From the IMG/VR virus record IMGVR_UViG_3300020473_001965, positions 1-64,000 of that record: a DNA stretch of 64,000 bases; one strand, written 5' to 3'. The notes beneath the pieces were generated by a model, which saw nothing but the letters and a program-made list of their open reading frames with translations, was not told the DNA's origin and did no database searches. The translations under genes and the position numbers were made by a program. Shown in pieces: positions 29,444 to 64,000 of this stretch (the stretch's first letter is position 1; each line of letters opens with the position of its first letter).

Positions 29444-29635
29444 TTAGCTCGTGACAACTGTTAGCCTTTTTTGCTCATGAACCGTTGTAGTGTCGCCTTC
29501 TAAGACTTCCCATGTACAGTACTCAGCATCGTAAGACAGTCGCTTGCGCCGTACGACGACCCCCACCCTGCCAGTGTCCAGCCTTCCTCCCCACCGAGAG
29601 ACCTTCCAGATCTTTACTAGATCACCGACTTTCAT
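29444..29635 (-). CDS. MKVGDLV-family cassette
   Basis: Starts in the ATGAAAGTCGGTGA overlap. Confidence 0.75.
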   Translation of the reverse strand: MKVGDLVKIWKVSRWGGRLDTGRVGVVVRRKRLSYDAEYCTWEVLEGDTTTVHEQKRLTVVTS

Positions 29636-29804
29636 TGATAACCTCTGCATTCACAAAATCAAGATCACTGCGGGTCCACGTATCAAATTCGCCATCAATA
29701 AGAAATTCAAACTTATAGCCATCTGCCCATGTACAAACACCAATCCAGCTGTGGCGATCCATTTCAGTGATATAATCTACTTTGACGCAATCACCGACTT
29801 TCAC
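29622..29804 (-). CDS. MKVGDLV-family cassette
   Basis: MKVGDCV...EVINESR. Confidence 0.75.
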   Translation of the reverse strand: MKVGDCVKVDYITEMDRHSWIGVCTWADGYKFEFLIDGEFDTWTRSDLDFVNAEVINESR

Positions 29805-29952
29805 TGATCACCTCTAAATCACGCAGAGAAAATTTCTCGCCACAATGCAGGATTACCCACGGGTGCCTTCGCGCCATGGGATTATCAGTAACAATCTCCA
29901 TAATTATTCCAGTTGTTCCATTTTTTAGTCTTACTAGATCACCGACTTGCAT
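29791..29952 (-). CDS. MKVGDLV-family cassette, 53 aa (not in ORF track)
   Basis: Hand-translated MQVGDLVRLK...LEVISESR. Confidence 0.75.
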   Translation of the reverse strand: MQVGDLVRLKNGTTGIIMEIVTDNPMARRHPWVILHCGEKFSLRDLEVISESR

Positions 29953-30118
29953 CGATCACCTCTTCAATTTGTGTATAGTGAAAAGCCTTCAACACACCGT
30001 CAACTTTGATAATAGGGTTCTTGAACGAATCCAGATCGACGACTAGTCCCAACTTGCCAGCTGAAGGACCGTTCCTTCGTGTCGAGTCGTGAAGCTTTAC
30101 TAGATCACCGACCTTCAT
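29939..30118 (-). CDS. MKVGDLV-family cassette, 59 aa (not in ORF track)
   Basis: Hand-translated MKVGDLVKLH...EEVIDASR. Confidence 0.75.
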   Translation of the reverse strand: MKVGDLVKLHDSTRRNGPSAGKLGLVVDLDSFKNPIIKVDGVLKAFHYTQIEEVIDASR

Positions 30119-30275
30119 TAATCACCTCAATCTGAGTCTCTGGCCAGACAACCATCGATCCATCACAGTCTAGAATATCCCACCAGCCTTCTGCAAACTC
30201 ACCATAACTGACTAGCACTCCGATTCGCTCTTTGTCGAAAGAGCCCATAAACTTTACAATGTCACCGACTTTCAT
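30105..30275 (-). CDS. MKVGDLV-family cassette, 56 aa (not in ORF track)
   Basis: Hand-translated MKVGDIVKF...IEVINEGR. Confidence 0.75.
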   Translation of the reverse strand: MKVGDIVKFMGSFDKERIGVLVSYGEFAEGWWDILDCDGSMVVWPETQIEVINEGR

Positions 30276-30465
30276 TGATGACCTCCATCAGAGATACCAT
30301 TGACTGGGTGAAGTCTCCGTTGTCCCAAAGGACGTCTGCACTCAGTTGCTTCCTCGTGCGACCACTGGTCCAGACCTGCATGACGACACCTGTCTGTCTC
30401 TCACCCGGTGTCACCGTCGATCCCCAAGTGCCTTTAAACTTTATCAGATCTCCAACCTTCAGCAC
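30262..30465 (-). CDS. MKVGDLV-family cassette
   Basis: MLKVGDLI...VLWDNG...EVINESR. Confidence 0.75.
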   Translation of the reverse strand: MLKVGDLIKFKGTWGSTVTPGERQTGVVMQVWTSGRTRKQLSADVLWDNGDFTQSMVSLMEVINESR

Positions 30466-30650
30466 ACCTTCTCCAACTCATCCTCGTCAAACTCAGCGAC
30501 CTGACCCAGAACCATGACTTTGGCTGCGGGAATGTAGAGCCGCTTTGCCAAAGCAATGACCACACCGATCTGGCCTTCTGCTTCCGGCCATGCAGAATGG
30601 ACACTGTTGTCATGAAGAATCCTGACCATGTCTCCTACAGCCAACTCCAC
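30459..30650 (-). CDS. MKVGDLV-family cassette
   Basis: ELAVGDMVRI..GVVI. Confidence 0.7.
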   Translation of the reverse strand: MELAVGDMVRILHDNSVHSAWPEAEGQIGVVIALAKRLYIPAAKVMVLGQVAEFDEDELEKVC

Positions 30651-30651
30651 T

Positions 30652-30765
30652 TCAGCACCCCACACAGTGCATGCACCATGGCATGTTGCAGGCTACCGCG
30701 ATGATGGCGGGAACGATTGCGATGATTGCGAGTGTTCTAGTGATGTCTTGAGCAGCTTGTGCCAT
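30652..30765 (-). CDS. 37-aa membrane peptide ending CMHCVGC (not in ORF track)
   Basis: MAQAAQDITRTLAIIAIVPAIIAVACNMPWCMHCVGC; GAGG RBS. Confidence 0.65.
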   Translation of the reverse strand: MAQAAQDITRTLAIIAIVPAIIAVACNMPWCMHCVGC

Positions 30766-30805
30766 TTTGAGTACCTCTTGGTGAGAGTGACGTAAGGCGT
30801 TTCCT

Positions 30806-30846
30806 CCTTACATTCTTATAATACCACGCTCACCCGAGTCTTACAC
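30806..30846 (-). promoter_or_regulatory. Repeated early promoter
   Basis: GTGTAA-N17-TATTAT with TG extension, ends GTAAGG. Confidence 0.8.
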
Positions 30847-31020
30847 TAACTCAAGCCACTCCGCCTTGACACACCACTGGCGTCCGTCTTCCCACATAAC
30901 GAGAATGTTGTCGTCTCTCATAAACTTCGGGAGGATCTTGACAACCAATCCGGAATGCGCGCGGTCTGGTTTGTGGCTGTACTTTACTAGAGAGCCTTCT
31001 TCGATTCTGGCTTTACCCAT
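30841..31020 (-). CDS. MKVGDLV-family cassette, 59 aa (not in ORF track)
   Basis: MGKARIEEGSLVKY..GLVV..VMWEDG..WLELV. Confidence 0.7.
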   Translation of the reverse strand: MGKARIEEGSLVKYSHKPDRAHSGLVVKILPKFMRDDNILVMWEDGRQWCVKAEWLELV

Positions 31021-31220
31021 ACTCCCTCCTTCATCCAGTAGTCGACGTCGCTACGAGAGACACCTTCAATTGAAGTCTCCAACGTCGTCCCCGGGATACC
31101 TGACCACAAGACCTCTACCCAATCACACGCTTCAGCGAACTCTTCGTCCGAGTCATAGGGCGTGATGTCCAGGATCACACCCGTCTCATCACCGCACTGC
31201 ACCAAGTCACCGACTTTCAC
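30987..31220 (-). CDS. MKVGDLV-family cassette
   Basis: MKVGDLV..GVIL..VLW. Confidence 0.75.
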   Translation of the reverse strand: MKVGDLVQCGDETGVILDITPYDSDEEFAEACDWVEVLWSGIPGTTLETSIEGVSRSDVDYWMKEGVWVKPESKKAL

Positions 31221-31410
31221 TGACTACCTCCAAAAACATTTCTTTCACTCTTCGCGTTGTCCCTGTCTCAGGCCACATGACGTGTACGATGTTGTACATA
31301 GAGTGCAGCCCTTGATCCTCATGCTTGACGACGATGCCGTGACCAGGTGGGTAGGCATGGATCCGACTCGAGTAGTTAACTATCTTTACTAGATCACCGA
31401 CTTTCATCAA
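31207..31410 (-). CDS. MKVGDLV-family cassette
   Basis: MKVGDLV...LEVVSESR. Confidence 0.75.
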   Translation of the reverse strand: MMKVGDLVKIVNYSSRIHAYPPGHGIVVKHEDQGLHSMYNIVHVMWPETGTTRRVKEMFLEVVSESR

Positions 31411-31624
31411 TCACCTCGAGCTCCACCACCGGGATGTTCAATTTGCAGTCGTCGTACATCACAACTGCATGCAGCTCCGGGTCTACCTCTCGCCAGTCAA
31501 TCATTGGACCCAGCTCATCTGTCCGCCAGACTTTCTTCTGAATCGTGTCGACAACAATTCCCGTACGGGTCGCGACCTGTTTTTCATCGATCTTCTTTAG
31601 TCTTACCAAATCACCTGTCTTCAT
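31394..31624 (-). CDS. MKVGDLV-family cassette
   Basis: MKTGDLV...LEVIDESR. Confidence 0.75.
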   Translation of the reverse strand: MKTGDLVRLKKIDEKQVATRTGIVVDTIQKKVWRTDELGPMIDWREVDPELHAVVMYDDCKLNIPVVELEVIDESR

Positions 31625-31802
31625 GTACTCTCTCCACTCTTTCTCGCATAATCCAGTTGCACCTGCCATCAGCCCACAGTACGACTGGGTCACGCCTCCC
31701 CGGCCGTGGGTCTGATCCTTGATTGTCTGACCAATCGATAACAACCCCTGTCATCCGACTCTCCGAAAAGAGGTTCTTCACTAAGTCACCAATCTTCAGC
31801 AT
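31611..31802 (-). CDS. MKVGDLV-family cassette
   Basis: MLKIGDLV..VLWADG..HEDR. Confidence 0.75.
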   Translation of the reverse strand: MLKIGDLVKNLFSESRMTGVVIDWSDNQGSDPRPGRRDPVVLWADGRCNWIMRERVERVHEDR

Positions 31803-31972
31803 GCCAATCTCAACTCGTCTTCCCATACACCAATCATATGCCCATCGTCCCAAAGGATCACGCAGAAACAGTACTCACCGTTAACTGTGTGCTCGGTTTC
31901 GACAACAATGCCAACCGGAAGTCCTTCGACCCCCGGTTCGCGTTTCATCTGTACGAGATCTCCTACGTTCAC
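31796..31972 (-). CDS. MKVGDLV-family cassette, 58 aa (not in ORF track)
   Basis: GTG start NVGDLVQM..GIVV..ILWDDG. Confidence 0.7.
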   Translation of the reverse strand: MNVGDLVQMKREPGVEGLPVGIVVETEHTVNGEYCFCVILWDDGHMIGVWEDELRLAC

Positions 31973-31983
31973 TCAGCTCTCCG

Positions 31984-32103
31984 TCAGTGTCCTGGGCAGT
32001 GCATGCAAAGATCGAGCACTTCAGCCAAAACGATGATTGTTGGGAACATAGCGACGATCACCGTTCCAGTGATCTGATCTTGATATTTCTTGAGTGTTTC
32101 CAT
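31984..32103 (-). CDS. 39-aa membrane peptide ending CMHCPGH (not in ORF track)
   Basis: METLKKYQDQITGTVIVAMFPTIIVLAEVLDLCMHCPGH; AAGGA RBS. Confidence 0.65.
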   Translation of the reverse strand: METLKKYQDQITGTVIVAMFPTIIVLAEVLDLCMHCPGH

Positions 32104-32150
32104 TGTCTCTTCCTTGGTGAGGAGGTTACGTTAGTAAGGTTGTTTTCCTT

Positions 32151-32191
32151 CCTTACATTCTTATTATATCCCGCGCCGCGGCGTCTTACAC
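32151..32191 (-). promoter_or_regulatory. Repeated early promoter
   Basis: 41-bp family copy. Confidence 0.8.
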
Positions 32192-32195
32192 TGGA

Positions 32196-32390
32196 TTACT
32201 CAGATTCCTTTACCACCTCGAGCCAGTCAGCCGGCTCCCAGTCTACGACCAGAGAGTCACACCACATCACACCGACTCGCCGCATGTTCCCACTAATCTT
32301 CTGGCGATCGTCAACAATTAGTCCAACCGATGGCGGCTCACCGCATGGGATCGATTCACCCGGCATTATGACGAGATCACCGGCTTTCAC
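32196..32390 (-). CDS. MKVGDLV-family cassette
   Basis: MKAGDLV..GLIV..VMW..WLEVV. Confidence 0.75.
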   Translation of the reverse strand: MKAGDLVIMPGESIPCGEPPSVGLIVDDRQKISGNMRRVGVMWCDSLVVDWEPADWLEVVKESE

Positions 32391-40739: not shown

Positions 40740-40748
40740 TGGGTACCT

Positions 40749-41365: not shown

Positions 41366-41562
41366 CTGTCTAGTCGAGTAGAGTGCTCGAGCTTAGTTTC
41401 CTCTTCCTCTTCAACCTCAACCGGTGTTGGCTCCAGGTATGGGTCTAGACTATCGCCCCTGATCCACATCCCAAACTGAGCACCCCACGTCGGATGAAGG
41501 CTGATAGCAATGAGGAAGCCCCAGACTCCGAATCCGATGATAGTGAATAGCGCTTCAACCAT
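41356..41562 (-). CDS. Small membrane protein
   Basis: N-terminal TM; TAATG coupling. Confidence 0.6.
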   Translation of the reverse strand: MVEALFTIIGFGVWGFLIAISLHPTWGAQFGMWIRGDSLDPYLEPTPVEVEEEEETKLEHSTRLDRWV

Positions 41563-42905: not shown

Positions 42906-42914
42906 TTGTTATCT

Positions 42915-42955
42915 CCTTACTATCTAATAATATCACGCTGCGCCGAATCTTACAC
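42915..42955 (-). promoter_or_regulatory. Repeated early promoter
   Basis: 41-bp family copy. Confidence 0.85.
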
Positions 42956-43016
42956 CAAAGCGCGCCAGCTCCACCACAGAGCTGACGCTTTGGCACACCC
43001 TCTAGCGAGGACTGAA

Positions 43017-44045: not shown

Positions 44046-44082
44046 GCTAGTTTCCTTGGTTAGAGGGGGTGTGTTTTTGTTT

Positions 44083-44123
44083 CCTTACTATCTAATAATA
44101 TCACGTCGCGACGGGTCTTACAC
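44083..44123 (-). promoter_or_regulatory. Repeated early promoter
   Basis: 41-bp family copy. Confidence 0.85.
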
Positions 44124-44185
44124 CGTTTTCACCGCTTATTAGTAAGTATTCTGTTCAACGGTGAAACTCTGCGGTGGAGCTGCCG

Positions 44186-44923
44186 CTAGGCAGCGTCCTC
44201 TTCGTCGTTCTCGAGAATGCCCATCGTCATCGCGAGGGCGAGGCACGCCTCTTCCTTCTCACGCCGGAGGTTCGCGAGCTTCGACTCATGACGCTCGATC
44301 TCGTCTTGGATTCGCTGGTCGTAGCGATCGGCGCCGCTGTTGCTCTGAAGTCGCTCAGCATTCGCGATCGTCGGGTAGGTCTCCCAGCTGATGCGCATGC
44401 GATCCGGGTCTAGACCCAGCGGGCCGACGAGCATCGCGCTCGCGAGCTGCTCTGCTTCTGCGACGTTCTTTGCCGGAATGTACGCGATGGTACGGTACCC
44501 GCAGCTGATCTCGTAGAGACCGATGACAGTGTCTTCATGACGATGCTGATAGTTGCGCATGTACCTCACGCGGTTGTACACGCGGTCGTCGAGGCGGTTC
44601 TCGCGGCGGACCTTAGCCTTGTACGAGCTCTTCTTGCCTTTGCGGCGCTCCAGCTCATCCGCGTGCCAATCCACCGCATCACTCGAGTTCACGAAGCCAA
44701 GGGCGTGGATCTGATCGAACGTGTAGCCCCAAAGCTGACAGTCGTCATTCTCGTTGACGTACTTGTCGCGGTACTTGTTGTACCGGTCGCACCAGACTTC
44801 TTTTCGGACCACGCGCGGCGGTCCGTGCGGGCTCCTGCCCAGCGTGCCCTTCGGCTTCGCCTGCAACAGGTCGTCAATGATGGCGAATCGGGTCGCGCTC
44901 GGGGTCGGTACGAATGGCTTCAT
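44186..44923 (-). CDS. Hypothetical early protein
   Basis: AAGGAG RBS; GLYEISCGY..YIPAKNVAEA. Confidence 0.7.
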   Translation of the reverse strand: MKPFVPTPSATRFAIIDDLLQAKPKGTLGRSPHGPPRVVRKEVWCDRYNKYRDKYVNENDDCQLWGYTFDQIHALGFVNSSDAVDWHADELERRKGKKSSYKAKVRRENRLDDRVYNRVRYMRNYQHRHEDTVIGLYEISCGYRTIAYIPAKNVAEAEQLASAMLVGPLGLDPDRMRISWETYPTIANAERLQSNSGADRYDQRIQDEIERHESKLANLRREKEEACLALAMTMGILENDEEDAA

Positions 44924-44945
44924 ATGTCTGTTCTCCTTAGTGATT

Positions 44946-44986
44946 CCTTACTATCTAATAATACCATGCGCCGGCGGGCTTTACAC
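44946..44986 (-). promoter_or_regulatory. Repeated early promoter
   Basis: 41-bp family copy. Confidence 0.85.
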
Positions 44987-45002
44987 CAAACGCCGCTCCG
45001 CT

Positions 45003-45242
45003 TCAGCGGTGGCAACCGTCGTCACGCCAGACGATCGTCCCACGCTTCGTGTTCATGTAGTCACTGATCACCAGCAGCTCACCATCGGGGTGCGGGTGCG
45101 CGGCGACCACGCAGTAGTCGTACGCGTCCAGGACATATGTCTCGAAGGCATGCAGAGTCCTCGCCTTGTGGGCCAGTACCCGAAGCTCCGCCGCTGGGAT
45201 TCTCTGTCTCTTGCTGCTCATCACGTTCTCCTTTGTGCGCAT
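45003..45242 (-). CDS. Hypothetical protein
   Basis: AAGGAG RBS before MSSKR. Confidence 0.55.
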   Translation of the reverse strand: MRTKENVMSSKRQRIPAAELRVLAHKARTLHAFETYVLDAYDYCVVAAHPHPDGELLVISDYMNTKRGTIVWRDDGCHR

Positions 45243-45245
45243 TCT

Positions 45246-45698
45246 TTACGCTCCGTATCCGTACTCTTCTGCCTTCGCCTCGTAGATCTCCCACTGCTCC
45301 AGCTCATATCCACCATTTGGGCGCAAGCCCAATGCGACTTCCTCACGGTCCTGCCGCTCCTGCTCAGCCAGCCACGCCGCCTCGGCCTCCCACTGCTCCT
45401 TCGCAGTCTCCGCCATGCGCACGTTCGCAGCCCAGACCTCTTCGAGGGTCATGTCCTCGTGGGGCATGCGCTTGCAACCCCACACGTCCTTGTGCCACTC
45501 ACAGTACGCATCGCGAGCCGAGCTCAGCTCCAACTCATAGACATTGGCGTACTCTTCCGCCAGGTCTTCCGACATGTTGGTCCAGAAGTCCCAGCCCTCC
45601 GCCACTGCCTGCGCATCGCGCGCGGCGTTCTGCGCCCGGATGTAACCCAGGACGTCAGTGTTTCCGAGGAGGCCAAGTTCGCGGGTGGTGAGGGTCAT
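45246..45698 (-). CDS. Acidic, Trp-rich hypothetical protein; first gene of the early island
   Basis: GGAG RBS after promoter 45739. Confidence 0.7.
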   Translation of the reverse strand: MTLTTRELGLLGNTDVLGYIRAQNAARDAQAVAEGWDFWTNMSEDLAEEYANVYELELSSARDAYCEWHKDVWGCKRMPHEDMTLEEVWAANVRMAETAKEQWEAEAAWLAEQERQDREEVALGLRPNGGYELEQWEIYEAKAEEYGYGA

Positions 45699-45738
45699 GC
45701 TAAGCTCCGATTCTGCGCCGGCCGAGTTGCCGCCGATT

Positions 45739-45779
45739 CCTTACTATCTAATAATATCACGCGGGCTCGAGTCTTACAC
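45739..45779 (-). promoter_or_regulatory. Repeated early promoter
   Basis: 41-bp family copy. Confidence 0.85.
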
Positions 45780-45941
45780 AAAAACGCGCGTTACTCCGAT
45801 ATCAATATCCGGGCAACATCCGATATCACCTCCCGCCGGGAACACGGGAAGACGCTGAGCACGCGCGCTGCGACCCTGCGTAAATATTTTGCGCCCCTCA
45901 CCCGGTGCCGCGCGGTGGTGGAGCTCAGACCAGGAGACGTT

Positions 45942-45961
45942 GAAAGTGATAATCATTATCA
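45942..45961. promoter_or_regulatory. Fur-box-like operator
   Basis: GAAAGTGATAATCATTATC is 17/19 to GATAATGATAATCATTATC; perfect TGATAAT-C-ATTATCA. Confidence 0.7.
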
Positions 45962-45969
45962 AAAACTAA

Positions 45970-45987
45970 TGAATGAACATTCATTCA
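45970..45987. promoter_or_regulatory. Perfect inverted repeat TGAATGAA-CA-TTCATTCA (TetR-type operator-like)
   Basis: Seen directly. Confidence 0.55.
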
Positions 45988-46060
45988 CTCACACGTCCGC
46001 GCGGCCCGGGCCACCCATGAACGCACATTCACTCCGGGCCGCGCTAAATGTTGATTCGAC

Positions 46061-56872: not shown

Positions 56873-57095
56873 CTGGCTTTGGCATCTCACAAGAGATAAC
56901 TGGGATTTCTTGTGCTTTGTCTTTTACAACATAGATTTTTTGGCCCACTTTAATTTCGCAGGGAATAGCGGAATTCTGCAAGATCCCTACCGAAGGACCA
57001 CCATTGGTTGCTGGATTTAGATTGAACTCCACAGTTGATAAAACAGCGTCATGAGATATCACTGTGCCTATCAATACAAAAGAACTAAGCGTCAC
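56862..57095 (-). CDS. Hypothetical protein
   Basis: GTGA coupling to thyX. Confidence 0.55.
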   Translation of the reverse strand: MTLSSFVLIGTVISHDAVLSTVEFNLNPATNGGPSVGILQNSAIPCEIKVGQKIYVVKDKAQEIPVISCEMPKPDEK

Positions 57096-57814
57096 TTGTC
57101 ACCTTCCCTTCCTTTAATGCGGCGATATGCGCCTATTGTTTCTGGAAACAGATCTGTCGCTATTTCTAGACAGGCTTCTGCAACTTTCTGTATTTCCCAC
57201 TGTGCACCGTCATGAGTCCGAAGATCTACGAACTTCAAGAGATTGTTGAGATCAACTGTCCCATAGTACTCCGTGTACATATTTTGTGGGAGTATTCCTC
57301 TTGCTTGCTCTCGACAGACGCCGGCAGCAATTAAGTCATTGAACATTCTGAGTGAATGTTCATGATGCCTCTTAATTAATGACGCTGCCTGGAGTTTTCC
57401 GCCGTCTTCGTAATTGTAGATAACAGGATTTTCTAATTCGTCTGCATTACTGGCTTGACGATTAGACTTATGCTGTGTCCTAAATGATTCAGGTTCATAA
57501 AAGCCAATACCTACATCGGTATAGCGCCGAGAAATCTCGTTATAAGACCACGTTCTATGACGATGGTGCTGAGAACGTACGAACAAAGGAACGTTAAACC
57601 GATAAGTGATAATACAGTGCTCCAAAGTCGAAGTGTGCTTGTGCCGTATGAGATAGTTAATGAGCTTCTTGTCTCTTTCATCTAGACTCTCCTTTTCTAC
57701 TCCGAAGGAAACACGAGCGCTATTGACAACAGTCAAGTCAGTACCCATGTGATCTACGTAATCTACACTACCAATGTCATCACTGTAAATCTTAATCGAC
57801 TTCTTGTAGTTCAT
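57092..57814 (-). CDS. thyX: Flavin-dependent thymidylate synthase
   Basis: ARVSF, HTSTLEH, RHRTWSYNEISRRY, AQWEI. Confidence 0.95.
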   Translation of the reverse strand: MNYKKSIKIYSDDIGSVDYVDHMGTDLTVVNSARVSFGVEKESLDERDKKLINYLIRHKHTSTLEHCIITYRFNVPLFVRSQHHRHRTWSYNEISRRYTDVGIGFYEPESFRTQHKSNRQASNADELENPVIYNYEDGGKLQAASLIKRHHEHSLRMFNDLIAAGVCREQARGILPQNMYTEYYGTVDLNNLLKFVDLRTHDGAQWEIQKVAEACLEIATDLFPETIGAYRRIKGREGDK

Positions 57815-58001
57815 TCTTTTCCTCTTTTTGTTTGTTCCATGCTTTATCAGCCTTGCGACCTACTAGACCGTAACCGATGGCTAATGGTACTGATCCTGCT
57901 AAAAAGGTTACATGATGATACCAGCGCCAGGATGCTGGATCATCTGGGTAGTTGAACAAATCAAACCACCTATAAGACCACTTTACCAGAAACTCTCCCA
58001 T
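57792..58001 (-). CDS. Small membrane protein
   Basis: One TM. Confidence 0.5.
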   Translation of the reverse strand: MGEFLVKWSYRWFDLFNYPDDPASWRWYHHVTFLAGSVPLAIGYGLVGRKADKAWNKQKEEKNELQEVD

Positions 58002-58009
58002 AATAGATT

Positions 58010-58219
58010 CTAATCTGGGTTATTGAATTGTTCAATATCTTTCTTTCCCGCCTTCTGAACATTTTCTGCACGAATCCGTAGTACCTCGCCTTCGTGTAAA
58101 ATAGTGGCGATCTTCTCCCAGGTGTGATATTCAACAAGCAACCCTATGTTCCAAGCTTCATATCTTGAGAAGAAAGATTTGGGCTTGACTTTAAATCTTA
58201 CTAAATCACCAGCCTTCAT
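58010..58219 (-). CDS. MKVGDLV-family cassette
   Basis: MKAGDLV..GLLV. Confidence 0.75.
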   Translation of the reverse strand: MKAGDLVRFKVKPKSFFSRYEAWNIGLLVEYHTWEKIATILHEGEVLRIRAENVQKAGKKDIEQFNNPD

Positions 58220-58220
58220 T

Positions 58221-58424
58221 CTACTTGCTCCATGACACTCCGATTCGGCCGTCTTTGTCAAGTACTTCAAGAAGCGGGCCAGATTTTTGCCAACGTTCCC
58301 AAGCATCGTCAACGTCATATTCTAGCATATGATCATCAGCCCTATCACAGTACTCTTTAAACGTTAAGACTCTAATTACAAGCAACTCTCCATCGTCAAT
58401 CAAGTCCCCGGGTTTTAGATCCAC
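58221..58424 (-). CDS. MKVGDLV-related protein
   Basis: LKPGDLI. Confidence 0.6.
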   Translation of the reverse strand: MDLKPGDLIDDGELLVIRVLTFKEYCDRADDHMLEYDVDDAWERWQKSGPLLEVLDKDGRIGVSWSK

Positions 58425-58666
58425 CTAACACCTCACAGCGATGCCTAACAACGCAATTATGACTAAGCATGCTCCAAAAGCTTTTCCAATCAAAACCCAG
58501 TCTTCTTTATCGAGATATTTACCCATCACCCCTTTCTCTTCTTTCACGAATTTCTTTTTGTAAATCTATCAAATCATACGGTCCAGTGCGTTTTTTCCTC
58601 ACTAGGTAAAAGAACATCACAAACGCAAACGAAACTGTAAATGCAGCTGCTACAGCAAGAAGCGAC

Positions 58667-58852
58667 TCAAGCACTGATCACCTCCAACCTTCGTGACTTA
58701 TCGGTCTGTATAGACCCGTCTTGCCACATCACCTTAACATCTTTCCGACCAGCATACACACCCACCTCAATAATCATTCCAACCCAGTCATATCCGGTTG
58801 GTGCCCATTTCTGGGTTTTGAAATCGAACTTTACCAAATCACCGACTTTCAT
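58667..58852 (-). CDS. MKVGDLV-family cassette
   Basis: MKVGDLV..VMWQDG..LEVISA. Confidence 0.75.
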   Translation of the reverse strand: MKVGDLVKFDFKTQKWAPTGYDWVGMIIEVGVYAGRKDVKVMWQDGSIQTDKSRRLEVISA

Positions 58853-59048
58853 TGACTACCTCGAGAGATTCTGGGTATTCTTCTTCAGCTGGATATCTAT
58901 CGTTCCAGCACACTACAGCATATCTTTCTTGTGGGTCTCCAAAATTGTCAACATCAGTATGAAAATCAATTATGACACCCACCCATTGCTTTTCATGTGT
59001 GCTTACCCACGCGTCTTCTTTTGGTCTAACTAAATCCCCAACTCTCAT
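58839..59048 (-). CDS. MKVGDLV-family cassette
   Basis: MRVGDLV...LEVVNESR. Confidence 0.75.
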   Translation of the reverse strand: MRVGDLVRPKEDAWVSTHEKQWVGVIIDFHTDVDNFGDPQERYAVVCWNDRYPAEEEYPESLEVVNESR

Positions 59049-59179
59049 GATCGGACCTTCATCACATCATCATGATCAAATAGCTCGCCAGTATGAATTT
59101 TTACTCTGTCAAGGTCGAACCAAACAACAATGCCTAAAGAATTATCTCGTACAACCTTGATCAAATCACCTACTTTCAT
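59045..59179 (-). CDS. MKVGDLV-family cassette, 44 aa (not in ORF track)
   Basis: MKVGDLIKVVRDNSLGIVV... Confidence 0.7.
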   Translation of the reverse strand: MKVGDLIKVVRDNSLGIVVWFDLDRVKIHTGELFDHDDVMKVRS

Positions 59180-59489
59180 CACATCCTCCGCATCCGTGGT
59201 CGATTTCTTTGTCGATTCCTTTAAGCTTAACCCACCCGCTCCAGATTATTGGGACTGCAAGCCAGTGTATACATAGCAACCAAGAGGCTGGTGCACCGGC
59301 GTAAAAGGCGGGATGAACATTATTTCCGAGAAATATAAAAAGCAAAGGGAAAAGCACATCTTCAATAATCTCCCATCCGATAATAATTATCACCAACGCG
59401 AGTCCGTGTTGCTTCATCGTACGTTTGATTGTGCCCCACCGAAAATGATCCAGCTTGTGGCCTAATCTATCTTTGATCCATTTTAACAT
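59166..59489 (-). CDS. Membrane protein embedded in the cassette array
   Basis: WEIIEDVLFP..LCIHW; ends DESR in the junction. Confidence 0.7.
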   Translation of the reverse strand: MLKWIKDRLGHKLDHFRWGTIKRTMKQHGLALVIIIIGWEIIEDVLFPLLFIFLGNNVHPAFYAGAPASWLLCIHWLAVPIIWSGWVKLKGIDKEIDHGCGGCDESR

Positions 59490-59667
59490 CTTCGCTTACC
59501 TTTCTCACATATCCAGCCGGCCACCACTTTACCACACCGCAACAAAGCACATTGATAAAGTGCATGGTCCCTGTACTTTCTTCGGGTTTTGCCTTTTCAA
59601 TCAGCACGCCGAGAATAAGATCTTCTTGGCCTTTCACGCCAACTTCCACTAAATCACCGACTTTCAC
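59467..59667 (-). CDS. MKVGDLV-family cassette
   Basis: MKVGDLV..GVLI. Confidence 0.75.
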   Translation of the reverse strand: MKVGDLVEVGVKGQEDLILGVLIEKAKPEESTGTMHFINVLCCGVVKWWPAGYVRKVSEDVKMDQR

Positions 59668-59812
59668 TGATCAGCTCCAACCACCCTTCGGCAATATACC
59701 TTACCTCACACGTCGTTTGGTCAAGAACACCTACCAACGCTGTATTGTCCACTTTTGCTACCAAATAACATTTGCCAAACCGCTTGTGCTTTACCAAGTC
59801 ACCGACTTTCAT
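59654..59812 (-). CDS. MKVGDLV-family cassette, 52 aa (not in ORF track)
   Basis: MKVGDLVKHK...LELISESR. Confidence 0.75.
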   Translation of the reverse strand: MKVGDLVKHKRFGKCYLVAKVDNTALVGVLDQTTCEVRYIAEGWLELISESR

Positions 59813-59979
59813 TTAATCACCATAAGGTAGCGAGTTGCGACTTCTTCGAGTATCTTAGTTTGACCGTGTGCAGTCCACAATATGCGGGCGGCCTTCCAAT
59901 CAAATGGGCGAATGCTGAGTATTACACCAGACCCTTGTAGCGTACCGAATTTATGTTTTACTAAATCACCGACTTTCAC
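59809..59979 (-). CDS. MKVGDLV-family cassette, 56 aa (not in ORF track)
   Basis: GTG KVGDLVKHK..GVIL..ILW. Confidence 0.75.
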   Translation of the reverse strand: MKVGDLVKHKFGTLQGSGVILSIRPFDWKAARILWTAHGQTKILEEVATRYLMVIK

Positions 59980-60069
59980 TGATCACTAGCGTTCCAGCAA
60001 TTGCACGACGAACAGCATCGGCCGCCGGCAAAAATGTCTGCCATAAATCTAAAAAACTTCTTAATCATA

Positions 60070-60480
60070 TTACCTGTCTTCATCATCTTCTCCTCTAGCA
60101 TAAATATCTCGTCCTTCTTCATATGCCTTTAGAACTGAGACAAGATTGAGAATATCTGAGCATGCGTCAATCCCGATGGTCTGCATCTCCATCAGGGCTT
60201 TTAGCTCCATCGACTCAAGATCTACAGCGACCTCACCGCTGCCGTAATCGACGACCATTTTCTTGATAATCGGCCCCACATGAATTCTATGCTCTGTTGT
60301 GGGCTTATGATTTGTGAATCCTTTTTCATACGCAAACAATTCTACAGCTTCCTTAGCCTCTCTTAGACCGCACTTCGTCTCACTTCGAACTGCTTTGATT
60401 GCAGCGATTTTTTTTGGGCTTGAATCATCGAGCCACTCGATTAGTGAATTATATGTCGACCTTCTAATTCTTAGAATCAT
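60070..60480 (-). CDS. Protein with ribosomal protein bL12 (L7/L12) C-terminal-like domain
   Basis: KIAAIKAVRSETKCGLREAKEAVE. Confidence 0.75.
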   Translation of the reverse strand: MILRIRRSTYNSLIEWLDDSSPKKIAAIKAVRSETKCGLREAKEAVELFAYEKGFTNHKPTTEHRIHVGPIIKKMVVDYGSGEVAVDLESMELKALMEMQTIGIDACSDILNLVSVLKAYEEGRDIYARGEDDEDR

Positions 60481-60808
60481 TTGTCACCTCCAATAGTGCC
60501 TCAGCAAGTATCGCTGACTGTGTCACGTTCATATCAAAAGGCGGAGTTTCTCCAGATTCGACGCCGCCATGTTTGACAATCAAAGCTTTCAATATTCCAA
60601 CTGGAACCCAACCGTATACTGTGCCGGTGGGGTCGTCAGGTGCCTCTGCGTATCCGATAATCATGGGCTCAACAGCTGATGGGAAACCCACCTCCACCTC
60701 AGTGTACGGGCCCTGATTGTCTCTGGGGTTAGAATAACTGGTATCACTAGCTTGAACACTCATGTTAAACCCAGATTTACAAAACAAACGCTTATACATC
60801 TTTCTCAT
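60464..60808 (-). CDS. Phage hypothetical protein
   Basis: MSVQAS..VEVGFP..VYGWVP..HGG. Confidence 0.7.
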   Translation of the reverse strand: MRKMYKRLFCKSGFNMSVQASDTSYSNPRDNQGPYTEVEVGFPSAVEPMIIGYAEAPDDPTGTVYGWVPVGILKALIVKHGGVESGETPPFDMNVTQSAILAEALLEVTNDSKN

Positions 60809-60986
60809 TTAGCTTCTTGGCTCTCCATTCCTTAAATTTTTCAGTTGACATTCCACCGATGACGTCTTCTAATTGTGCATCGTGCAACTCTGTTTCGTCA
60901 GGGAAGATTGATGCAGATTCGACCGTGTGTGTTCTAAGTTTCTTCTTTAACCAATCCCTTAAGTTGACAATATTATTGACTTTCAC
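60792..60986 (-). CDS. Small protein with double-glycine leader-like motif
   Basis: ELHDAQLEDVIGG. Confidence 0.55.
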   Translation of the reverse strand: MKVNNIVNLRDWLKKKLRTHTVESASIFPDETELHDAQLEDVIGGMSTEKFKEWRAKKLNEKDV

Positions 60987-61170
60987 TTACAACATCCCAA
61001 TACTCTTTCAGGTCACTCTTGATCCTGCCGTCTGGCAGCATTACTTTAATCGCATTTCCCGAAACTTCATATACTAGAAAGGGCTCTTCTGTGTATGGAA
61101 CTCCATGCTTGCTAGTCTTTTTCATCCAGAACGCAATGTACTTCATTTGCACTAAGTCACCAGCTTTCAC
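60973..61170 (-). CDS. MKVGDLV-family cassette
   Basis: MKAGDLV...DVVSESQ. Confidence 0.75.
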   Translation of the reverse strand: MKAGDLVQMKYIAFWMKKTSKHGVPYTEEPFLVYEVSGNAIKVMLPDGRIKSDLKEYWDVVSESQ

Positions 61171-61370
61171 TTAGATTCTCCAGTGTGGGCCGTGCCTCTC
61201 GTTTGAAATTCAATTAAGATGGGTTCACCCTTTTGGTCTACCATCTTTTGGAAATTAAAGTCGGCGGCGCCCAAGAAGACTGATGATCCATCGTGGAAAG
61301 TCACGCATACATGATGCACGTCTGGCTTTGCCTTCTTTATTCCATCAAACATTTTAACGTGAACAGTCAA
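61167..61370 (-). CDS. Hypothetical protein
   Basis: Coupled ORF. Confidence 0.5.
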   Translation of the reverse strand: MTVHVKMFDGIKKAKPDVHHVCVTFHDGSSVFLGAADFNFQKMVDQKGEPILIEFQTRGTAHTGESK

Positions 61371-61383
61371 CTTAAATTCCTTT

Positions 61384-61608
61384 CTACAGTTGTTCCTCTA
61401 GTCTCTCAAGAATCCACAAGTCGGGATCACCTGTTCTGGCTTTTGCGATACCATAAGGCATTTCCCCTGAGTTGCAAAAGTATTCGTACAGCTTATCGTA
61501 AGCTGTCGTTCCATAGAAGTCTAAATCTCCTGCAATAAAGTCTGGCATCAGAGTGCTTTCATCGATAGTCAACCCAGCTCCAGCATAAATCTCATTTAAC
61601 ATCTTCAC
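61384..61608 (-). CDS. Phage hypothetical protein
   Basis: GEMPYGIAKARTGDPDLWI. Confidence 0.7.
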   Translation of the reverse strand: MKMLNEIYAGAGLTIDESTLMPDFIAGDLDFYGTTAYDKLYEYFCNSGEMPYGIAKARTGDPDLWILERLEEQL

Positions 61609-61613
61609 TCCTC

Positions 61614-61805
61614 CTAGTATACCACTTTAAGTTTAAGGTAGCCAAAAGACTGATCTGACATCTCAGCACTCATAGCTTCCAAATCTTCGACATGAGAATC
61701 ATATTCAGCTGAGTTCTCATCCGTTGTCTTCATGATCTTAATGACTTCATTAAAGTAAGCGCGAGCTGACTCGCGGAGTTGTTCAAGATTGGCTTCTTCA
61801 TTCAT
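61614..61805 (-). CDS. Hypothetical protein
   Basis: AGGAGG RBS after promoter 61820-61860. Confidence 0.6.
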   Translation of the reverse strand: MNEEANLEQLRESARAYFNEVIKIMKTTDENSAEYDSHVEDLEAMSAEMSDQSFGYLKLKVVY

Positions 61806-61819
61806 AGCTTTTACCTCCT

Positions 61820-61860
61820 GGCTATGATTATATTATACTATAAGCCGCTTGATCTTACAC
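61820..61860 (-). promoter_or_regulatory. Promoter of the GTGTAA family
   Basis: GTGTAA-N17-TATAAT. Confidence 0.65.
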
Positions 61861-62300
61861 TAAACTGGATACTCAAAATTAGCTGTTACTATGTTTGTTG
61901 CTATCTCAGTTGCGCCATTGCGAAGATGAAATCTTCTAGCCATATCTGTCAGAGGAGACAGTGTTACGACCCTTTGGATTCCCCAGTCAGACTCCTTTAC
62001 ATACTTTAGAAGTGCATTGATTATGGCTTTCCCTGCGCCGCGGCGCAAACTCCACACTGTATATGGGATACAAATGCGGCCGTCGCTGAGTGTATATGAA
62101 CTCAGCGTCATAATATCAACTGGTATGGCATGTGTTCTTGCAACACAGCAGAAAGCGACGTAGTCTCCGGAAAGATCTCTTAGACCAAAGACTTCTCGAC
62201 CCGGGTACGTTTTAAAAGCTACTCCTAGCTCTGGTCTTACTGGATCACTATCACGCCATAGCTTGGGTGTATTGCTTACATTCTCAAGCACGTATTCCAT
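61860..62300 (-). CDS. GNAT-like phage protein
   Basis: DPVRP, YTVWS..RGAGK, VTLSP..FHLRNGA. Confidence 0.65.
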   Translation of the reverse strand: MEYVLENVSNTPKLWRDSDPVRPELGVAFKTYPGREVFGLRDLSGDYVAFCCVARTHAIPVDIMTLSSYTLSDGRICIPYTVWSLRRGAGKAIINALLKYVKESDWGIQRVVTLSPLTDMARRFHLRNGATEIATNIVTANFEYPV

Positions 62301-62301
62301 A

Positions 62302-62502
62302 TCAAAACTCGCTTAACTTCAGTGGTTCAAGTCTATCTAGCTGTGTCCACGAAACTCCTGAATGCCATAACACCTTGGCCACTCGGACCATCACTGATGA
62401 GTCGTCAGGGTGATGCATTTTAAAATCGAGCAGAACTCCGGCATTCCGGCCTCGTATGTCGACGTCATTTCTTTTTATTCGTACCAAGTCACCTATTTTC
62501 AT
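62302..62502 (-). CDS. MKVGDLV-family cassette
   Basis: MKIGDLV..VLWHSG. Confidence 0.75.
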   Translation of the reverse strand: MKIGDLVRIKRNDVDIRGRNAGVLLDFKMHHPDDSSVMVRVAKVLWHSGVSWTQLDRLEPLKLSEF

Positions 62503-62701
62503 CTACAACTACTCTCCCAGGATTATCAATAGCATCTCTCATAGTCAGGCCGAAGTGCTCAGCAACAGCTAAAACTATTCTTTTCATTTGAGACGACTTT
62601 CCAGTGATAACAATAAAAGGCACGTCGAAGTCATTACAGCACCTTGATATAATATCGGAAACATCTTTGTGTCTCACCCCATGAAGATCAACTGTTTTCA
62701 T
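62489..62701 (-). CDS. Stand-alone Smr-domain-like protein
   Basis: VDLHG..VITG..NPG. Confidence 0.75.
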   Translation of the reverse strand: MKTVDLHGVRHKDVSDIISRCCNDFDVPFIVITGKSSQMKRIVLAVAEHFGLTMRDAIDNPGRVVVDENR

Positions 62702-62873
62702 CGATCACCACCCGGAGTCTAATTGACTGATCATGTGTGTAATGCCATTCGCCAGGGATTCCCTCCCAATCGACTACAACATAGTCCTTTGTTATCTTTA
62801 TAACTCTTCCCGATGCCACGTTGTGCTTCCACATAGGAGACATCTCAACTCTATCACCTACCTTGAAATTCAT
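62688..62873 (-). CDS. MKVGDLV-family cassette
   Basis: MNFKVGDRV..GRV..VDWE. Confidence 0.7.
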   Translation of the reverse strand: MNFKVGDRVEMSPMWKHNVASGRVIKITKDYVVVDWEGIPGEWHYTHDQSIRLRVVIDENS

Positions 62874-63441
62874 CACTCTGCTCTGTTGTTCTGGACCACC
62901 ATGGCGGAAGATCTCCCGATCTCCACTTAGCAAATCTTACCTTGTCCTTTAAATAATATTCTCTATAGCAGTCAACAGGATCATCACTTACCTTGTAATC
63001 TTCTAACATACAAATTGAGAACGGTGATAATCCTTTCGACTGTAATCGAGGCGGATGATTATTGTGTAGCCAACGATGCACCCTAGAAGACTTGTGGGTT
63101 TTGCCATATCGCTTTTCATACTCTTCACAAAGTGCTAATCCCAGCTTAGAGTGCCAGACATAATTGTCTAAGCTCTCTCTAGTCCAAACACTGCATGGGT
63201 GATTGATGTGTGTCATCTTCCACTCGGGCTGAAAAACGGTGGGAACTTCTTGATAAAGAAAAGCTTTTGCTTCTTTCTGCGTTCTAAAATCTTTTATATC
63301 CTTCTTAAGGTAGTCAAGCCAGCCCAACCAGTGCGCTGTACACAGCATCTGGCCTGACTCCAGAATCATCTTCAAGACGTGCTTGTCACAGTGGTAACTA
63401 GCTGCAATTTCTGGGTCGTTGTCAAGAATAAAGATGTTCAT
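62854..63441 (-). CDS. Pyrimidine-dimer glycosylase (DenV-like) family protein
   Basis: MNIFILD..HCDKHVLKMILESGQML, HINHPC, YREYY..PPWW. Confidence 0.8.
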   Translation of the reverse strand: MNIFILDNDPEIAASYHCDKHVLKMILESGQMLCTAHWLGWLDYLKKDIKDFRTQKEAKAFLYQEVPTVFQPEWKMTHINHPCSVWTRESLDNYVWHSKLGLALCEEYEKRYGKTHKSSRVHRWLHNNHPPRLQSKGLSPFSICMLEDYKVSDDPVDCYREYYLKDKVRFAKWRSGDLPPWWSRTTEQSDEFQGR

Positions 63442-63644
63442 ATTGTTTCTTTTCTCTCTGTCACTATTCTTAGTGTGCTGCAATCAACCCACTGAATTTT
63501 GCCATCCCAAAGCAGTATTTCAGCAGATCGGGTAGTGGCGCCAGTTCGAGACAACCTCAAAACGACGCCAAGATCAACATCAAACTTTTCTCGCACATCA
63601 TCTTTAGCTGAGTACCATTTGACGAGATCACCCTTTCTGATCAT
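63438..63644 (-). CDS. MKVGDLV-family cassette
   Basis: MIRKGDLVKW..GVVL..LWDG. Confidence 0.7.
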   Translation of the reverse strand: MIRKGDLVKWYSAKDDVREKFDVDLGVVLRLSRTGATTRSAEILLWDGKIQWVDCSTLRIVTERKETI

Positions 63645-63653
63645 TGGAGTACC

Positions 63654-63872
63654 TTACTTTAGTTTTAGAGTTGCAACTTCAGTGTCTAGCTCGATTGAAA
63701 AGTTTCCAAAGTTATACGAGGTTTCAAGCAACGCTGCAGCCGTAGTTTCAAGATCGAGCGTGATTGAATAATTGCCTCGCTTAAAATCATATTGTTGCAA
63801 CGAAGTGTCTAGGCCAAACTCATAGTAATCATAGGTTACTGCCTCTGAAATATCGTCTGGGACGAACGTCAT
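63654..63872 (-). CDS. Hypothetical protein
   Basis: ORF track; internal SI(T/E)LD(L/T)E repeat. Confidence 0.5.
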   Translation of the reverse strand: MTFVPDDISEAVTYDYYEFGLDTSLQQYDFKRGNYSITLDLETTAAALLETSYNFGNFSIELDTEVATLKLK

Positions 63873-64000
63873 TTGAGAAACAACTTCATCCCATACTTCA
63901 TCTTCGTCAAAGTTGTCATCTTCTGGGCTTGTTAGATTGAGGTGCTTTGTTGCTTCGCTGAAGTCGTATTCATTACCTTCATCATCAATAAAGTAACCTT

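What the first reader, a model, noticed from the sequence alone, without database searches (positions are those of the whole stretch)
58010..63644. Second cassette field in which unrelated passenger genes use the same junction
About 12 more MKVGDLV-type genes are interleaved with unrelated ORFs whose ends are written by junction-like overlaps: membrane protein ..DESR (59166), bL12-like ..DEDR (60070), Smr-like ..DENR (62489), and starts MKVNNIV (60986) and MKTVDL (62701). Inference: the junction is a general plug-in site that captures arbitrary cargo in frame with coupled translation. The family occurs on both sides of the putative terminus.
Basis: partly seen in the sequence, partly recalled or inferred. 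Interest (0 to 1): 0.62.

Follow-up and report, generated by a model that had tools for sequence, protein, structure and literature searches.

The report
Overlapping-start gene cassettes in marine phage
A giant T4-like marine phage packs tiny SH3-like genes and unrelated small genes so tightly that each gene's stop lies inside the next gene's start signal, and natural strains differ by whole start-to-start units, so this shared start signal also acts as a recombination joint.

Summary
Window 58010-63644 (minus strand) holds 12 paralogues of a 44-69 aa family (start M-K-V-G-D-L-V) interleaved with 13 unrelated small genes, nearly all overlapping or abutting. The 'junction' is the family's translation-initiation region: a Shine-Dalgarno sequence, ATG or GTG, then AAA GTC GGT GAY. 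It carries TGA in both other frames. An upstream ORF therefore ends at A-TGA (4-nt overlap) or at GG-TGA (14-nt overlap, tail D/N-E-S/N-R). The DESR and DENR tails are thus the next gene's first codons read out of frame, not a signature of the cargo. Across 33 related loci, 16 of 80 non-family upstream genes use the 14-nt form and 30 use the 4-nt form. The family is a predicted SH3/KOW-like barrel with no Pfam family. The plug-in idea is partly supported. Natural strains 97-99% identical carry three alleles between the bL12-like gene and 59667: the window form, a 167-nt one-unit loss, and a block replacement. Each differs by whole start-to-start units, with breakpoints at the junctions. More distant phages share single units in other neighbourhoods. 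There is no integrase, hairpin or promoter-terminator at the junction. The closest analogue is PeSL-mediated shuffling in T4-type phages. Translational coupling is inferred, not shown.

The parts
58010..63644 (-). Second small-gene array: 12 SH3-like family genes plus 13 unrelated small genes, all overlapping or abutting except for gaps of 54, 11 and 13 nt at 61806-61859, 61603-61613 and 61371-61383
29444..32390 (-). First array of the same family (about 12 members, mostly 14-nt overlaps)
58833..58852 (-). Junction core (start of family gene 58852; the upstream family gene ends ..LEVVNESR with a 14-nt overlap). Equivalent cores lie at 58200, 59029, 59160, 59648, 59793, 59960, 61151 and 62483
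   Evidence: direct-repeat families D1 and D2, 24-26 nt, 7-8 copies
59681..60084 (-). Polymorphic block with three natural alleles. A (window): Cys-rich mini-gene, then units 59979 and 59812. B: lacks 167 nt, one unit. C: replaced by two other family units. The boundaries are the start of the gene after bL12 and the SD-plus-core region of unit 59667
59809..59979 (-). Family unit 59979 (56 aa), present or absent between strains. An 85% nt copy sits among unrelated neighbours in L186 and a 77% copy lies upstream of bL12 in L185
59976..60086 (-). 36-aa Cys-rich mini-gene whose first 12 nt equal the start of family gene 31624. It is absent in allele C
60070..60480 (-). bL12 C-terminal-domain-like passenger (136 aa). 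Its tail is EDDEDR here and EEDINESR in allele C
59166..59489 (-). Membrane-protein passenger (107 aa), tail ..GGCDESR. Positions 59433-59141 are about 13-14% divergent from the variant strain, against 1-2% in the flanks
62489..62701 (-). 70-aa passenger with a DLHG motif (Smr-like lead only), with 14-nt overlaps at both ends
62854..63441 (-). Pyr_excise-like passenger (195 aa). It runs 13 codons past the family's usual ..PPWW end into the next gene's GGTGA (20-nt overlap)
61860..62300 (-). GNAT-like passenger (146 aa). It has three different tails in three genomic contexts
60792..60986 (-). 64-aa passenger. Its first 9 nt equal the family core; a double-glycine leader-like motif lies inside
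57092..57814 (-). thyX, the conserved anchor next to the array. The variant strain has a different gene downstream of it

Best explanation
This is a hyperplastic small-gene array of an uncultured marine T4-like (Far-T4-type) jumbo myovirus. SHOWN: The repeated 'junction' is the translation-initiation region of a tandemly expanded family of 44-80 aa proteins with a predicted SH3/KOW-like five-strand barrel. It consists of an SD-like GGAGGTGAT, 2-3 nt, ATG or GTG, then AAA GTC GGT GAY. When the upstream gene is a family member, the SD is written in the codons of that gene's last strand, L-E-V-I. The residue after it is N, S or D because AAT-GA, AGT-GA and GAT-GA supply the next start codon. The first 14 nt of the downstream gene contain TGA in both other frames. 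An upstream ORF without its own stop therefore ends at A-TGA (4-nt overlap) or GG-TGA (14-nt overlap, tail E-S/N-R). Passenger tails are therefore written by whatever gene follows, and they change with context. This also holds for non-family downstream genes: the bL12-like gene's own start region gives tails LEVTNDSKN and EVVSDSTY to two different upstream genes. SHOWN: The 24-35 nt junction is a dispersed direct repeat. Natural strains 97-99% identical differ by whole start-to-start units. The one-unit loss has its crossover inside the 13-nt shared core, and the block replacement is bounded by the start of the gene after bL12 and the SD-plus-core of unit 59667. INFERRED: Homologous or microhomology recombination between junctions, by the phage's general recombination machinery, deletes, duplicates and swaps promoter-less units. 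Each unit arrives next to a ready SD and start and is translated by coupling or re-initiation. Non-family cargo enters when its start lands at or next to a junction. No dedicated recombinase is involved. The family's own function is unknown. A guess is nucleic-acid or ribosome/RNA-polymerase binding during host takeover.
For: Anatomy. Of 192 family starts in 33 loci, 89 of 112 with a family gene upstream have a 14-nt overlap. An SD-like motif is present in 95 of 102 of the 14-nt class. The Gly codon is GGT in 102 of 102 when it supplies the stop, but only 31 of 49 and 11 of 21 otherwise. Fold: AlphaFold2 pLDDT 95.5; Foldseek TM 0.8-0.86 to Spt5, MutS2 KOW and OapB; weak profile hits to eL21, uL24 and NusG. 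Real genes: synonymous versus non-synonymous codon differences between strains are 18:3 for the family and 42:20 for passengers; orthologues at 47-79% identity are intact. Context-dependent tails. Recombination at junctions: allele B in 3 assemblies; allele C in 5 samples. Unit-limited nucleotide similarity in L185 and L186. Shuffled order of bL12, GNAT and family units in L146, L147, L149 and L185. The exact 22-nt SD-plus-core sequence occurs in 20 stretches of 19 IMG/VR contigs. Depth spikes of 130-200x at junction bins come from other metagenome contigs. T4-type capsid gene gp23 is present.
Against: Only one hotspot with three alleles was found among near-identical strains; field 1 contigs were all 100% identical. 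Other strain differences are not at family junctions: the swap downstream of thyX and the membrane-gene patch. Breakpoints at gene starts are also what selection on random illegitimate recombination would leave. There is no expression or ribosome data; no RNA run holds the region. The host, and so its use of SD sequences, is unknown. The family-like first codons of some passengers (the SET gene in L146, the exonuclease in L147, 60986, 62701) were not shown to exceed chance.
Confidence: 0.7

Rival explanations
1. Passive compaction only. The overlaps and tails are by-products of tight packing. Gene-order differences arise from random illegitimate recombination, filtered by selection so that only joints at gene boundaries survive. 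The junction is not a preferred recombination substrate.
For: Overlaps of 4-56 nt are common between non-family genes of this genome (gene calls). Only 16 of 80 non-family upstream genes use the 14-nt form. A gene swap occurs at a non-family ATGA/GTGA boundary. The membrane-gene divergent patch does not end at the cores.
Against: The 167-nt indel has its crossover inside the 13-nt shared core with imperfect homology around it, the signature of repeat-mediated unequal exchange. The right boundary of allele C lies in a junction core and its left boundary lies directly at a family-like start. The same cores recur with 22-35 nt identity within and between genomes.
Confidence: 0.22
2. A dedicated site-specific cassette system, integron-like: the junction is a recombination site recognised by a phage or host recombinase that inserts cargo.
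For: Cassette-like start-to-start units and diverse cargo in relatives: SET, GIY-YIG, GNAT, bL12-like and exonuclease genes.
Against: No integrase or recombinase domain appears among the called genes around the array. There are no inverted repeats in the field. Junction folding is no better than shuffles, z -1.3 to +1.2. Passenger starts and ends vary in position.
Confidence: 0.04
3. The units are domains of a multi-SH3 polyprotein made by programmed frameshifting or read-through at the junction, not separate genes.
For: In-frame fused versions exist in other metagenome contigs: a 120-aa ORF of two units and a 165-aa ORF of a passenger plus a unit.
Against: Every unit keeps its own ATG or GTG (183 of 192) and most have an SD-like motif. 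Adjacent units use different relative frames: 14-nt, 4-nt, 1-nt and 0. Unrelated genes are interleaved. No slippery site or stimulatory structure was found.
Confidence: 0.04

Closest known systems
PeSL (promoter-early stem-loop) cassettes that mediate modular shuffling in hyperplastic regions of T4-type phages (PMC2839356, PMC4122927)
   Same: T4-type genome, and a region of small non-essential ORFs. A short conserved expression signal is repeated between the genes. Insertions, deletions and replacements between close relatives are bounded by that signal.
   Different: Here the repeat is a translational signal (SD, start and first codons) embedded in overlapping coding sequence. It is not a sigma-70 promoter plus terminator hairpin. 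Promoter and terminator scans are at chance and there is no stem-loop. Mini-circles were not examined.
Translational coupling through overlapping stop and start codons (ATGA, TAATG) in bacterial and phage operons (general knowledge)
   Same: The upstream stop lies within or next to the downstream start, and the SD lies inside the upstream coding sequence.
   Different: A 14-nt overlap is the dominant class. It is fixed by a conserved protein N-terminus whose Gly-Asp codons provide the stop. The whole module is repeated dozens of times and shared between genomes.
Integron gene cassettes
   Same: Promoter-less units with variable cargo, arranged head to tail.
   Different: No integrase, no attC hairpins, no fixed insertion point. 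Most units are paralogues of one family.
SH3-like / KOW / Tudor small beta-barrels (Spt5 and NusG KOW, uL24, eL21, MutS2 KOW, OapB)
   Same: Predicted five-strand barrel of 45-60 residues, TM 0.8-0.86.
   Different: No significant Pfam membership. These are stand-alone viral mini-proteins of unknown partner. One 90%-cluster member is named 'YkvS' by a source.

Membership tests
PeSL regulatory cassettes of T4-type phages | Sigma-70-like promoter followed by a stem-loop terminator at the cassette boundary | tested here: not met
   Promoter-like sites 22 against 14.7 +/- 3.5 expected, and terminator-like sites 5 against 5.7. Junction folds are no better than shuffles. No inverted repeats.
PeSL regulatory cassettes of T4-type phages | Indels and replacements between close relatives are bounded by the repeated motif, in a hyperplastic region of a T4-type genome | tested here: met
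   gp23 PF07068 at 1e-65. Alleles A, B and C have breakpoints at the junctions.
PeSL regulatory cassettes of T4-type phages | Excised mini-circles formed by exchange between neighbouring motifs | not testable with these tools
   Only Logan contigs were available, no raw reads.
Integron gene cassettes | Tyrosine-recombinase integrase (IntI) with attI next to the array | tested here: not met
   No integrase or recombinase Pfam family among the called genes within about 10 kb on either side.
Integron gene cassettes | attC sites: imperfect inverted repeats that fold as hairpins at each cassette end | tested here: not met
   0 inverted-repeat pairs in 57900-63700. Fold z-scores -1.3 to +1.2.
Translationally coupled overlapping genes | The upstream stop overlaps or abuts the downstream start, with an SD inside the upstream ORF | tested here: met
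   Of the 172 canonical M-K-x-G-D family starts, 151 have overlaps of 14, 4 or 1 nt. An SD-like motif is present in 95 of 102 (14-nt class), 31 of 49 and 13 of 21.
Translationally coupled overlapping genes | Downstream translation depends on upstream translation | not testable with these tools
   No RNA or ribosome data are available; no RNA run holds the region.
SH3-like / KOW beta-barrel | Five-strand small barrel fold | tested here: met
   AlphaFold2 pLDDT 95.5 with five strands. Foldseek TM 0.77-0.86 to KOW, Tudor and PWWP domains, all with E >= 0.03.
SH3-like / KOW beta-barrel | Sequence membership of a curated family (for example Pfam KOW) | tested here: not met
   No Pfam family reaches its cut-off in any of 27 members. 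PHROG 12538 (unknown function) at 3.8e-6. Atlas neighbours are unnamed viral clusters.
Ribosomal protein bL12 (PF00542) | C-terminal domain | tested here: inconclusive
   27.8 bits against a cut-off of 25.9, but only residues 17-47 match profile positions 5-35 of 67. 39 homologues carry the same Pfam mark.
Smr domain (PF01713) | Match to the Smr profile | tested here: not met
   No Pfam hit at E <= 0.1 and no PHROG hit. A DLHG motif at residues 5-8, and an Atlas cluster in which 16% of members carry Smr (score 0.88), are leads only.

The most novel reading that the evidence does not exclude
In a widespread group of marine Far-T4-like phages, a 25-35 nt translation-initiation module works as portable homology for start-to-start cassette exchange within and between genomes. 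The module comprises the SD, the start codon and a stop supplied by the next gene's Gly-Asp codons. In effect it is an 'integron without an integrase': it lets promoter-less cargo be acquired and expressed at once by translational coupling, and the SH3-like family serves as its scaffold.
Probability: 0.35. Interest if true: 0.72.

Novelty: new variant of a known kind. Interest (0 to 1): 0.55.

Why it matters
How phages gain, lose and immediately express the many small accessory genes of their hyperplastic regions is still poorly understood. The one documented mechanism in T4-type phages uses transcriptional cassettes (PeSLs). This array points to a translational counterpart. A dual-coding start/stop module makes every unit self-sufficient for initiation and supplies the previous gene's stop. 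It also provides the homology for unit exchange. If that holds, it gives a testable rule for reading these arrays in metagenomes: C-terminal tails are context-written and should not be used for homology or function calls. It would also give a compact design for stacking coupled genes. In addition, the work defines a large unnamed family of viral SH3-like mini-proteins (220 members in 37 loci fetched here) that sit beside a bL12-like protein. That pairing hints at interference with host translation or transcription.

Tried and rejected
- blastn of 57000-64000 against cultured-phage records found no match. tblastn of a family member against the same records found none.
- The exact allele-C joint was searched in IMG/VR with no match. 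It was later recovered through the protein cluster of the bL12-like gene.
- Read laying returned only Logan contigs. The many junction-to-junction 'joints' have sides of 21-29 nt, are best explained by other phages' cores matching two places, and were not counted as recombinants. Only the 1735-nt contig joint 60085/59813 was used, and it was then confirmed as locus L180.
- A second-round HMM gave wrong start inference and was used only to classify upstream ORFs.
- The integron-like reading was rejected: no hairpins, no inverted repeats, no integrase.
- The PeSL-type promoter/terminator reading was rejected: scans at chance.
- The 'LEVTNDSKN' tail of the 114-aa gene first looked like a remnant of a family 3' end. 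Comparison with L149 shows it is written by the bL12-like gene's own SD and start region.
- The field 1 population comparison gave only 100% identical contigs and so no information.
- The claim that passenger 5' ends are chimeric with the family start was not tested statistically and is left as suggestive.
- The big representative-protein search and the complex prediction were not used, because no claim here rests on them.
Full report
SOURCE. The window is the first 64 kb of an IMG/VR virus record of 235,672 bp, estimated 87% complete. The record is JGI 3300020473 Ga0211625_10000014. The same sequence lies in a 296,665-bp ENA contig and in several other marine-metagenome assemblies. The genome has a T4-type major capsid gene (PF07068, 1e-65) and no psbA in the record. 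Its capsid protein is only 32-46% identical to those of uncultured huge phages, Microcystis phage Mel-JY01, Flavobacterium phage immuto and Rhodothermus RM378. It is therefore a deep-branching, Far-T4-like marine jumbo myovirus with an unknown host. Of 163 ORFs of 150 aa or more in the record, 136 lie on the minus strand. Cumulative GC skew falls monotonically across the window. I see no terminus between the two fields.

THE OBSERVATION. On the minus strand of 58010-63644 I count 25 tightly packed genes.
- Twelve are members of one family, by a profile built from alignment A1. Their starts are at 63644, 62873, 62502, 61170, 59979, 59812, 59667, 59179, 59048, 58852, 58424 and 58219.
- The 20-nt start motif occurs 19 times in the window against 0.07 expected.
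- At up to 2 mismatches it occurs only in the two fields of the whole record.
- The protein-motif scan and the HMM add three outlying members at 74592, 83534 and 85752.

WHAT THE JUNCTION IS. Read in the downstream frame, the core is ATG (or GTG) AAA GTC GGT GAY, coding M-K-V-G-D.
- Shifted by two bases, the same letters read xAT GAA AGT CGG TGA, coding D/N/S-E-S-R-stop.
- Shifted by one base, the start itself gives A-TGA.
- The first 14 nt of a family gene thus hold a stop codon in both alternative frames.
- Upstream of the start sits GGAGGTGAT, an extended Shine-Dalgarno sequence. That this is complementary to the 16S rRNA 3' end is general knowledge; the host is unknown.
- When the upstream gene is a family member, this SD is written in the codons L-E-V-I of its last beta-strand. 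The next residue is N, S or D because AAT-GA, AGT-GA and GAT-GA create the start codon.
- The DESR and DENR tails of the membrane protein and the 'Smr-like' protein are therefore the next gene's M-K-V-G-D codons read out of frame.

HOW GENERAL IT IS. I fetched related loci through thyX, the Pyr_excise-like gene, the bL12-like gene, exact-protein look-ups and an exact 22-nt SD-plus-core pattern. That pattern occurs in 20 stretches of 19 IMG/VR contigs.
- The profile finds 220 family genes in 37 loci.
- 192 family starts have an upstream ORF of at least 30 codons. With a family gene upstream (n=112), 89 have the 14-nt overlap and 13 the 4-nt overlap.
- With a non-family gene upstream (n=80), 30 have the 4-nt overlap, 16 the 14-nt, 6 the 1-nt and 5 abut exactly. 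The rest scatter.
- The three relative frames hold 43, 29 and 8 of those 80 cases. Passengers arrive in any frame and stop at the first stop they meet. Only one in five uses the DESR-type end.
- The Gly codon is GGT in 102 of 102 cases where it supplies the stop, but in only 31 of 49 and 11 of 21 cases where it does not. This shows the dual-coding constraint.
- Even thyX ends ..REVLDENR with a 14-nt overlap in locus L032.

TAILS ARE WRITTEN BY CONTEXT.
- Homologues of the Pyr_excise-like protein end at ..PPWW plus 0-2 residues. The window copy runs 13 codons further, into the next gene.
- The GNAT-like gene ends ..NFEYPV here. In L149 it ends ..NFEYPIHPEVDSEPR, reading into a family start. In L072 it has a long Cys-rich tail.
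- The bL12-like protein ends ..EDDEDR in the window and ..EEDINESR in a strain 97-98% identical.
- A 93%-identical copy of unit 59979 ends ..LEVINESR. The window copy ends ..LMVIK because one extra base in the spacer shifts it to the ATGA overlap.
- The effect is not limited to the family. The bL12-like gene's own SD and start give the tails LEVTNDSKN and EVVSDSTY to two different upstream genes.

WHAT THE FAMILY IS.
- AlphaFold2 on A1 gives a five-strand barrel at pLDDT 95.5.
- Foldseek finds Spt5 KOW, MutS2 KOW, OapB, Agenet and PWWP domains at TM 0.7-0.86, though every E-value is 0.03 or higher.
- A profile search of PDB sequences gives weak eL21, uL24 and NusG hits.
- No Pfam family reaches its cut-off. 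PHROG 12538, of unknown function, matches at 3.8e-6.
- Atlas neighbours are unnamed viral clusters. The string MKVGDLV occurs in no paper of the library.
- These are real genes. Between strains 97-99% identical, codon differences are 18 synonymous to 3 non-synonymous in family genes and 42 to 20 in passengers. Orthologues at 47-79% identity are intact.

TEST OF THE PLUG-IN IDEA: NEAR-IDENTICAL STRAINS. Between the bL12-like gene and unit 59667 there are three natural alleles.
- Allele A is the window itself. It is seen in at least four independent assemblies. Its order is bL12, Cys-rich mini-gene, unit 59979, unit 59812.
- Allele B (L131, L132, L140; three samples and assemblers) lacks exactly 167 nt, the start-to-start distance from 59979 to 59812. 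Left of the core it carries the 59979 junction, including its GTG start. Right of the core it carries the 59812 sequence. The crossover therefore lies inside the 13-nt identical core. Exact identity of only 13 nt is too short to be a k-mer assembly collapse.
- Allele C (L180-L184, five samples, also seen as a contig joint) replaces 60084-59681 with two other family units. One is 70% identical in nucleotides to 59812 and the other is new. Flank identity of 97-99% ends directly after GAAGAT, before the first start. It resumes in the SD-plus-core of unit 59667. The Cys-rich mini-gene is absent from this allele. Its first 12 nt equal the start of family gene 31624.

TEST OF THE PLUG-IN IDEA: MORE DISTANT RELATIVES.
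- In L186 and in a 292-kb contig (L185), nucleotide similarity to this genome is confined to single units. The matches are 59983-59791 at 85%, 59978-59793 at 77% and 58861-58672 at 88%, all with unrelated neighbours.
- In L185 the 59979-like unit lies upstream of bL12, not downstream.
- L149 has the order family unit, bL12, GNAT. L147 joins an orthologue of a field 1 unit directly to a 5'-3' exonuclease whose first 10 nt equal the core; the upstream tail becomes ..DESRLT.
- L146 carries a SET-domain gene whose first 15 nt differ from its neighbours' family start (ATGAAAATCGGTGAT) at two positions. L076 carries a GIY-YIG gene ending ..YEGR.

LIMITS.
- Not every difference between strains is at a family junction. 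Downstream of thyX the variant strain has a different, secreted-looking gene joined at an ATGA overlap.
- The membrane-protein gene carries a divergent patch of about 13-14% (59433-59141) whose ends do not coincide with the cores.
- Overlaps are common throughout this genome.
- The junction has no hairpin (z -1.3 to +1.2) and no inverted repeat.
- Promoter and terminator matches are at chance. No recombinase gene lies nearby.
- No RNA run holds the region, so coupled translation is an inference from SD placement and the overlaps.

VERDICT.
- The shared tails are a mechanical consequence of dual coding and are not evidence of capture.
- The junction is nevertheless a demonstrated breakpoint for loss, gain and replacement of units in nature. 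It is also the edge of unit-sized similarity between genomes.
- The best reading is a translational analogue of PeSL-mediated modular shuffling in T4-type phages (PMC2839356, PMC4122927). It is driven by general homologous or microhomology recombination between dispersed 24-35 nt direct repeats, with cargo expressed through the ready-made SD and start.
- I rate it a new variant of a known kind, of moderate interest.

Noticed in passing
window 5354-5720 (-): A phage-encoded tmRNA gene (Rfam RF00023, 111.7 bits; ARAGORN tag peptide ANNNYHYEQRLAA). There are also five tRNA genes (Thr, Leu, Met, Lys, Arg) at 17.9 kb and 35.8-36.9 kb.
   Followed up: partly
window 9400-11331 (-): A 643-aa PrkA/YeaG-type 'serine kinase' homologue (PHROG 22605, 8.5e-131). 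It is 30-33% identical to genes of Thermus phages and huge uncultured phages.
   Followed up: partly
window 40000-46000: A GC-rich island (GC up to 0.60, against 0.36-0.45 elsewhere). It holds a DUF2201 metallopeptidase / VWA-like gene (41562-42905, -) and an unassigned 439-aa ORF on the plus strand. It may be foreign or a distinct module.
   Followed up: partly
window 60792-60986 (-); L076:2428-2619: Small passengers with a double-glycine leader-like motif (..QLEDVIGG.. and ..ELELVQGG..). This is reminiscent of bacteriocin- or prochlorosin-type precursor peptides.
   Followed up: no
window 59141-59433 (-): The membrane-protein gene is about 13-14% divergent from the variant strain over about 290 nt, while the flanks differ by 1-2%. 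This looks like an imported allele patch.
   Followed up: yes
window 57092-57104; L132, L133, L134: The variant strain has a 237-aa ThyX followed by a different gene (signal-peptide-like start MKTGRTLITAG..) in place of the window's 77-aa gene. The two are joined at the stop/start overlap.
   Followed up: yes
proteins P0086, P0126, P0057: Other metagenome contigs carry in-frame fused ORFs: two family units (120 aa), and a 107-aa passenger plus a unit (165 aa). Small junction changes can therefore make or break two-domain proteins, or else mislead gene callers.
   Followed up: partly
window 60070-60480 (-): The bL12 C-terminal-domain-like protein is conserved (45-79% identity) in 38 further protein clusters from marine metagenomes, usually inside such arrays. 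It could be a mimic that binds translation GTPases.
   Followed up: partly
window bins 58762-58949 and 59514-59701: Summed contig depth rises to 130-200x at junction bins, against about 5x elsewhere. Contig ends run on into unlike sequence. Many other phages in the same samples therefore share the junction core.
   Followed up: partly
L032:10001-10708: In another thyX-bearing phage contig, ThyX itself ends ..REVLDENR with a 14-nt overlap on a family gene.
   Followed up: partly
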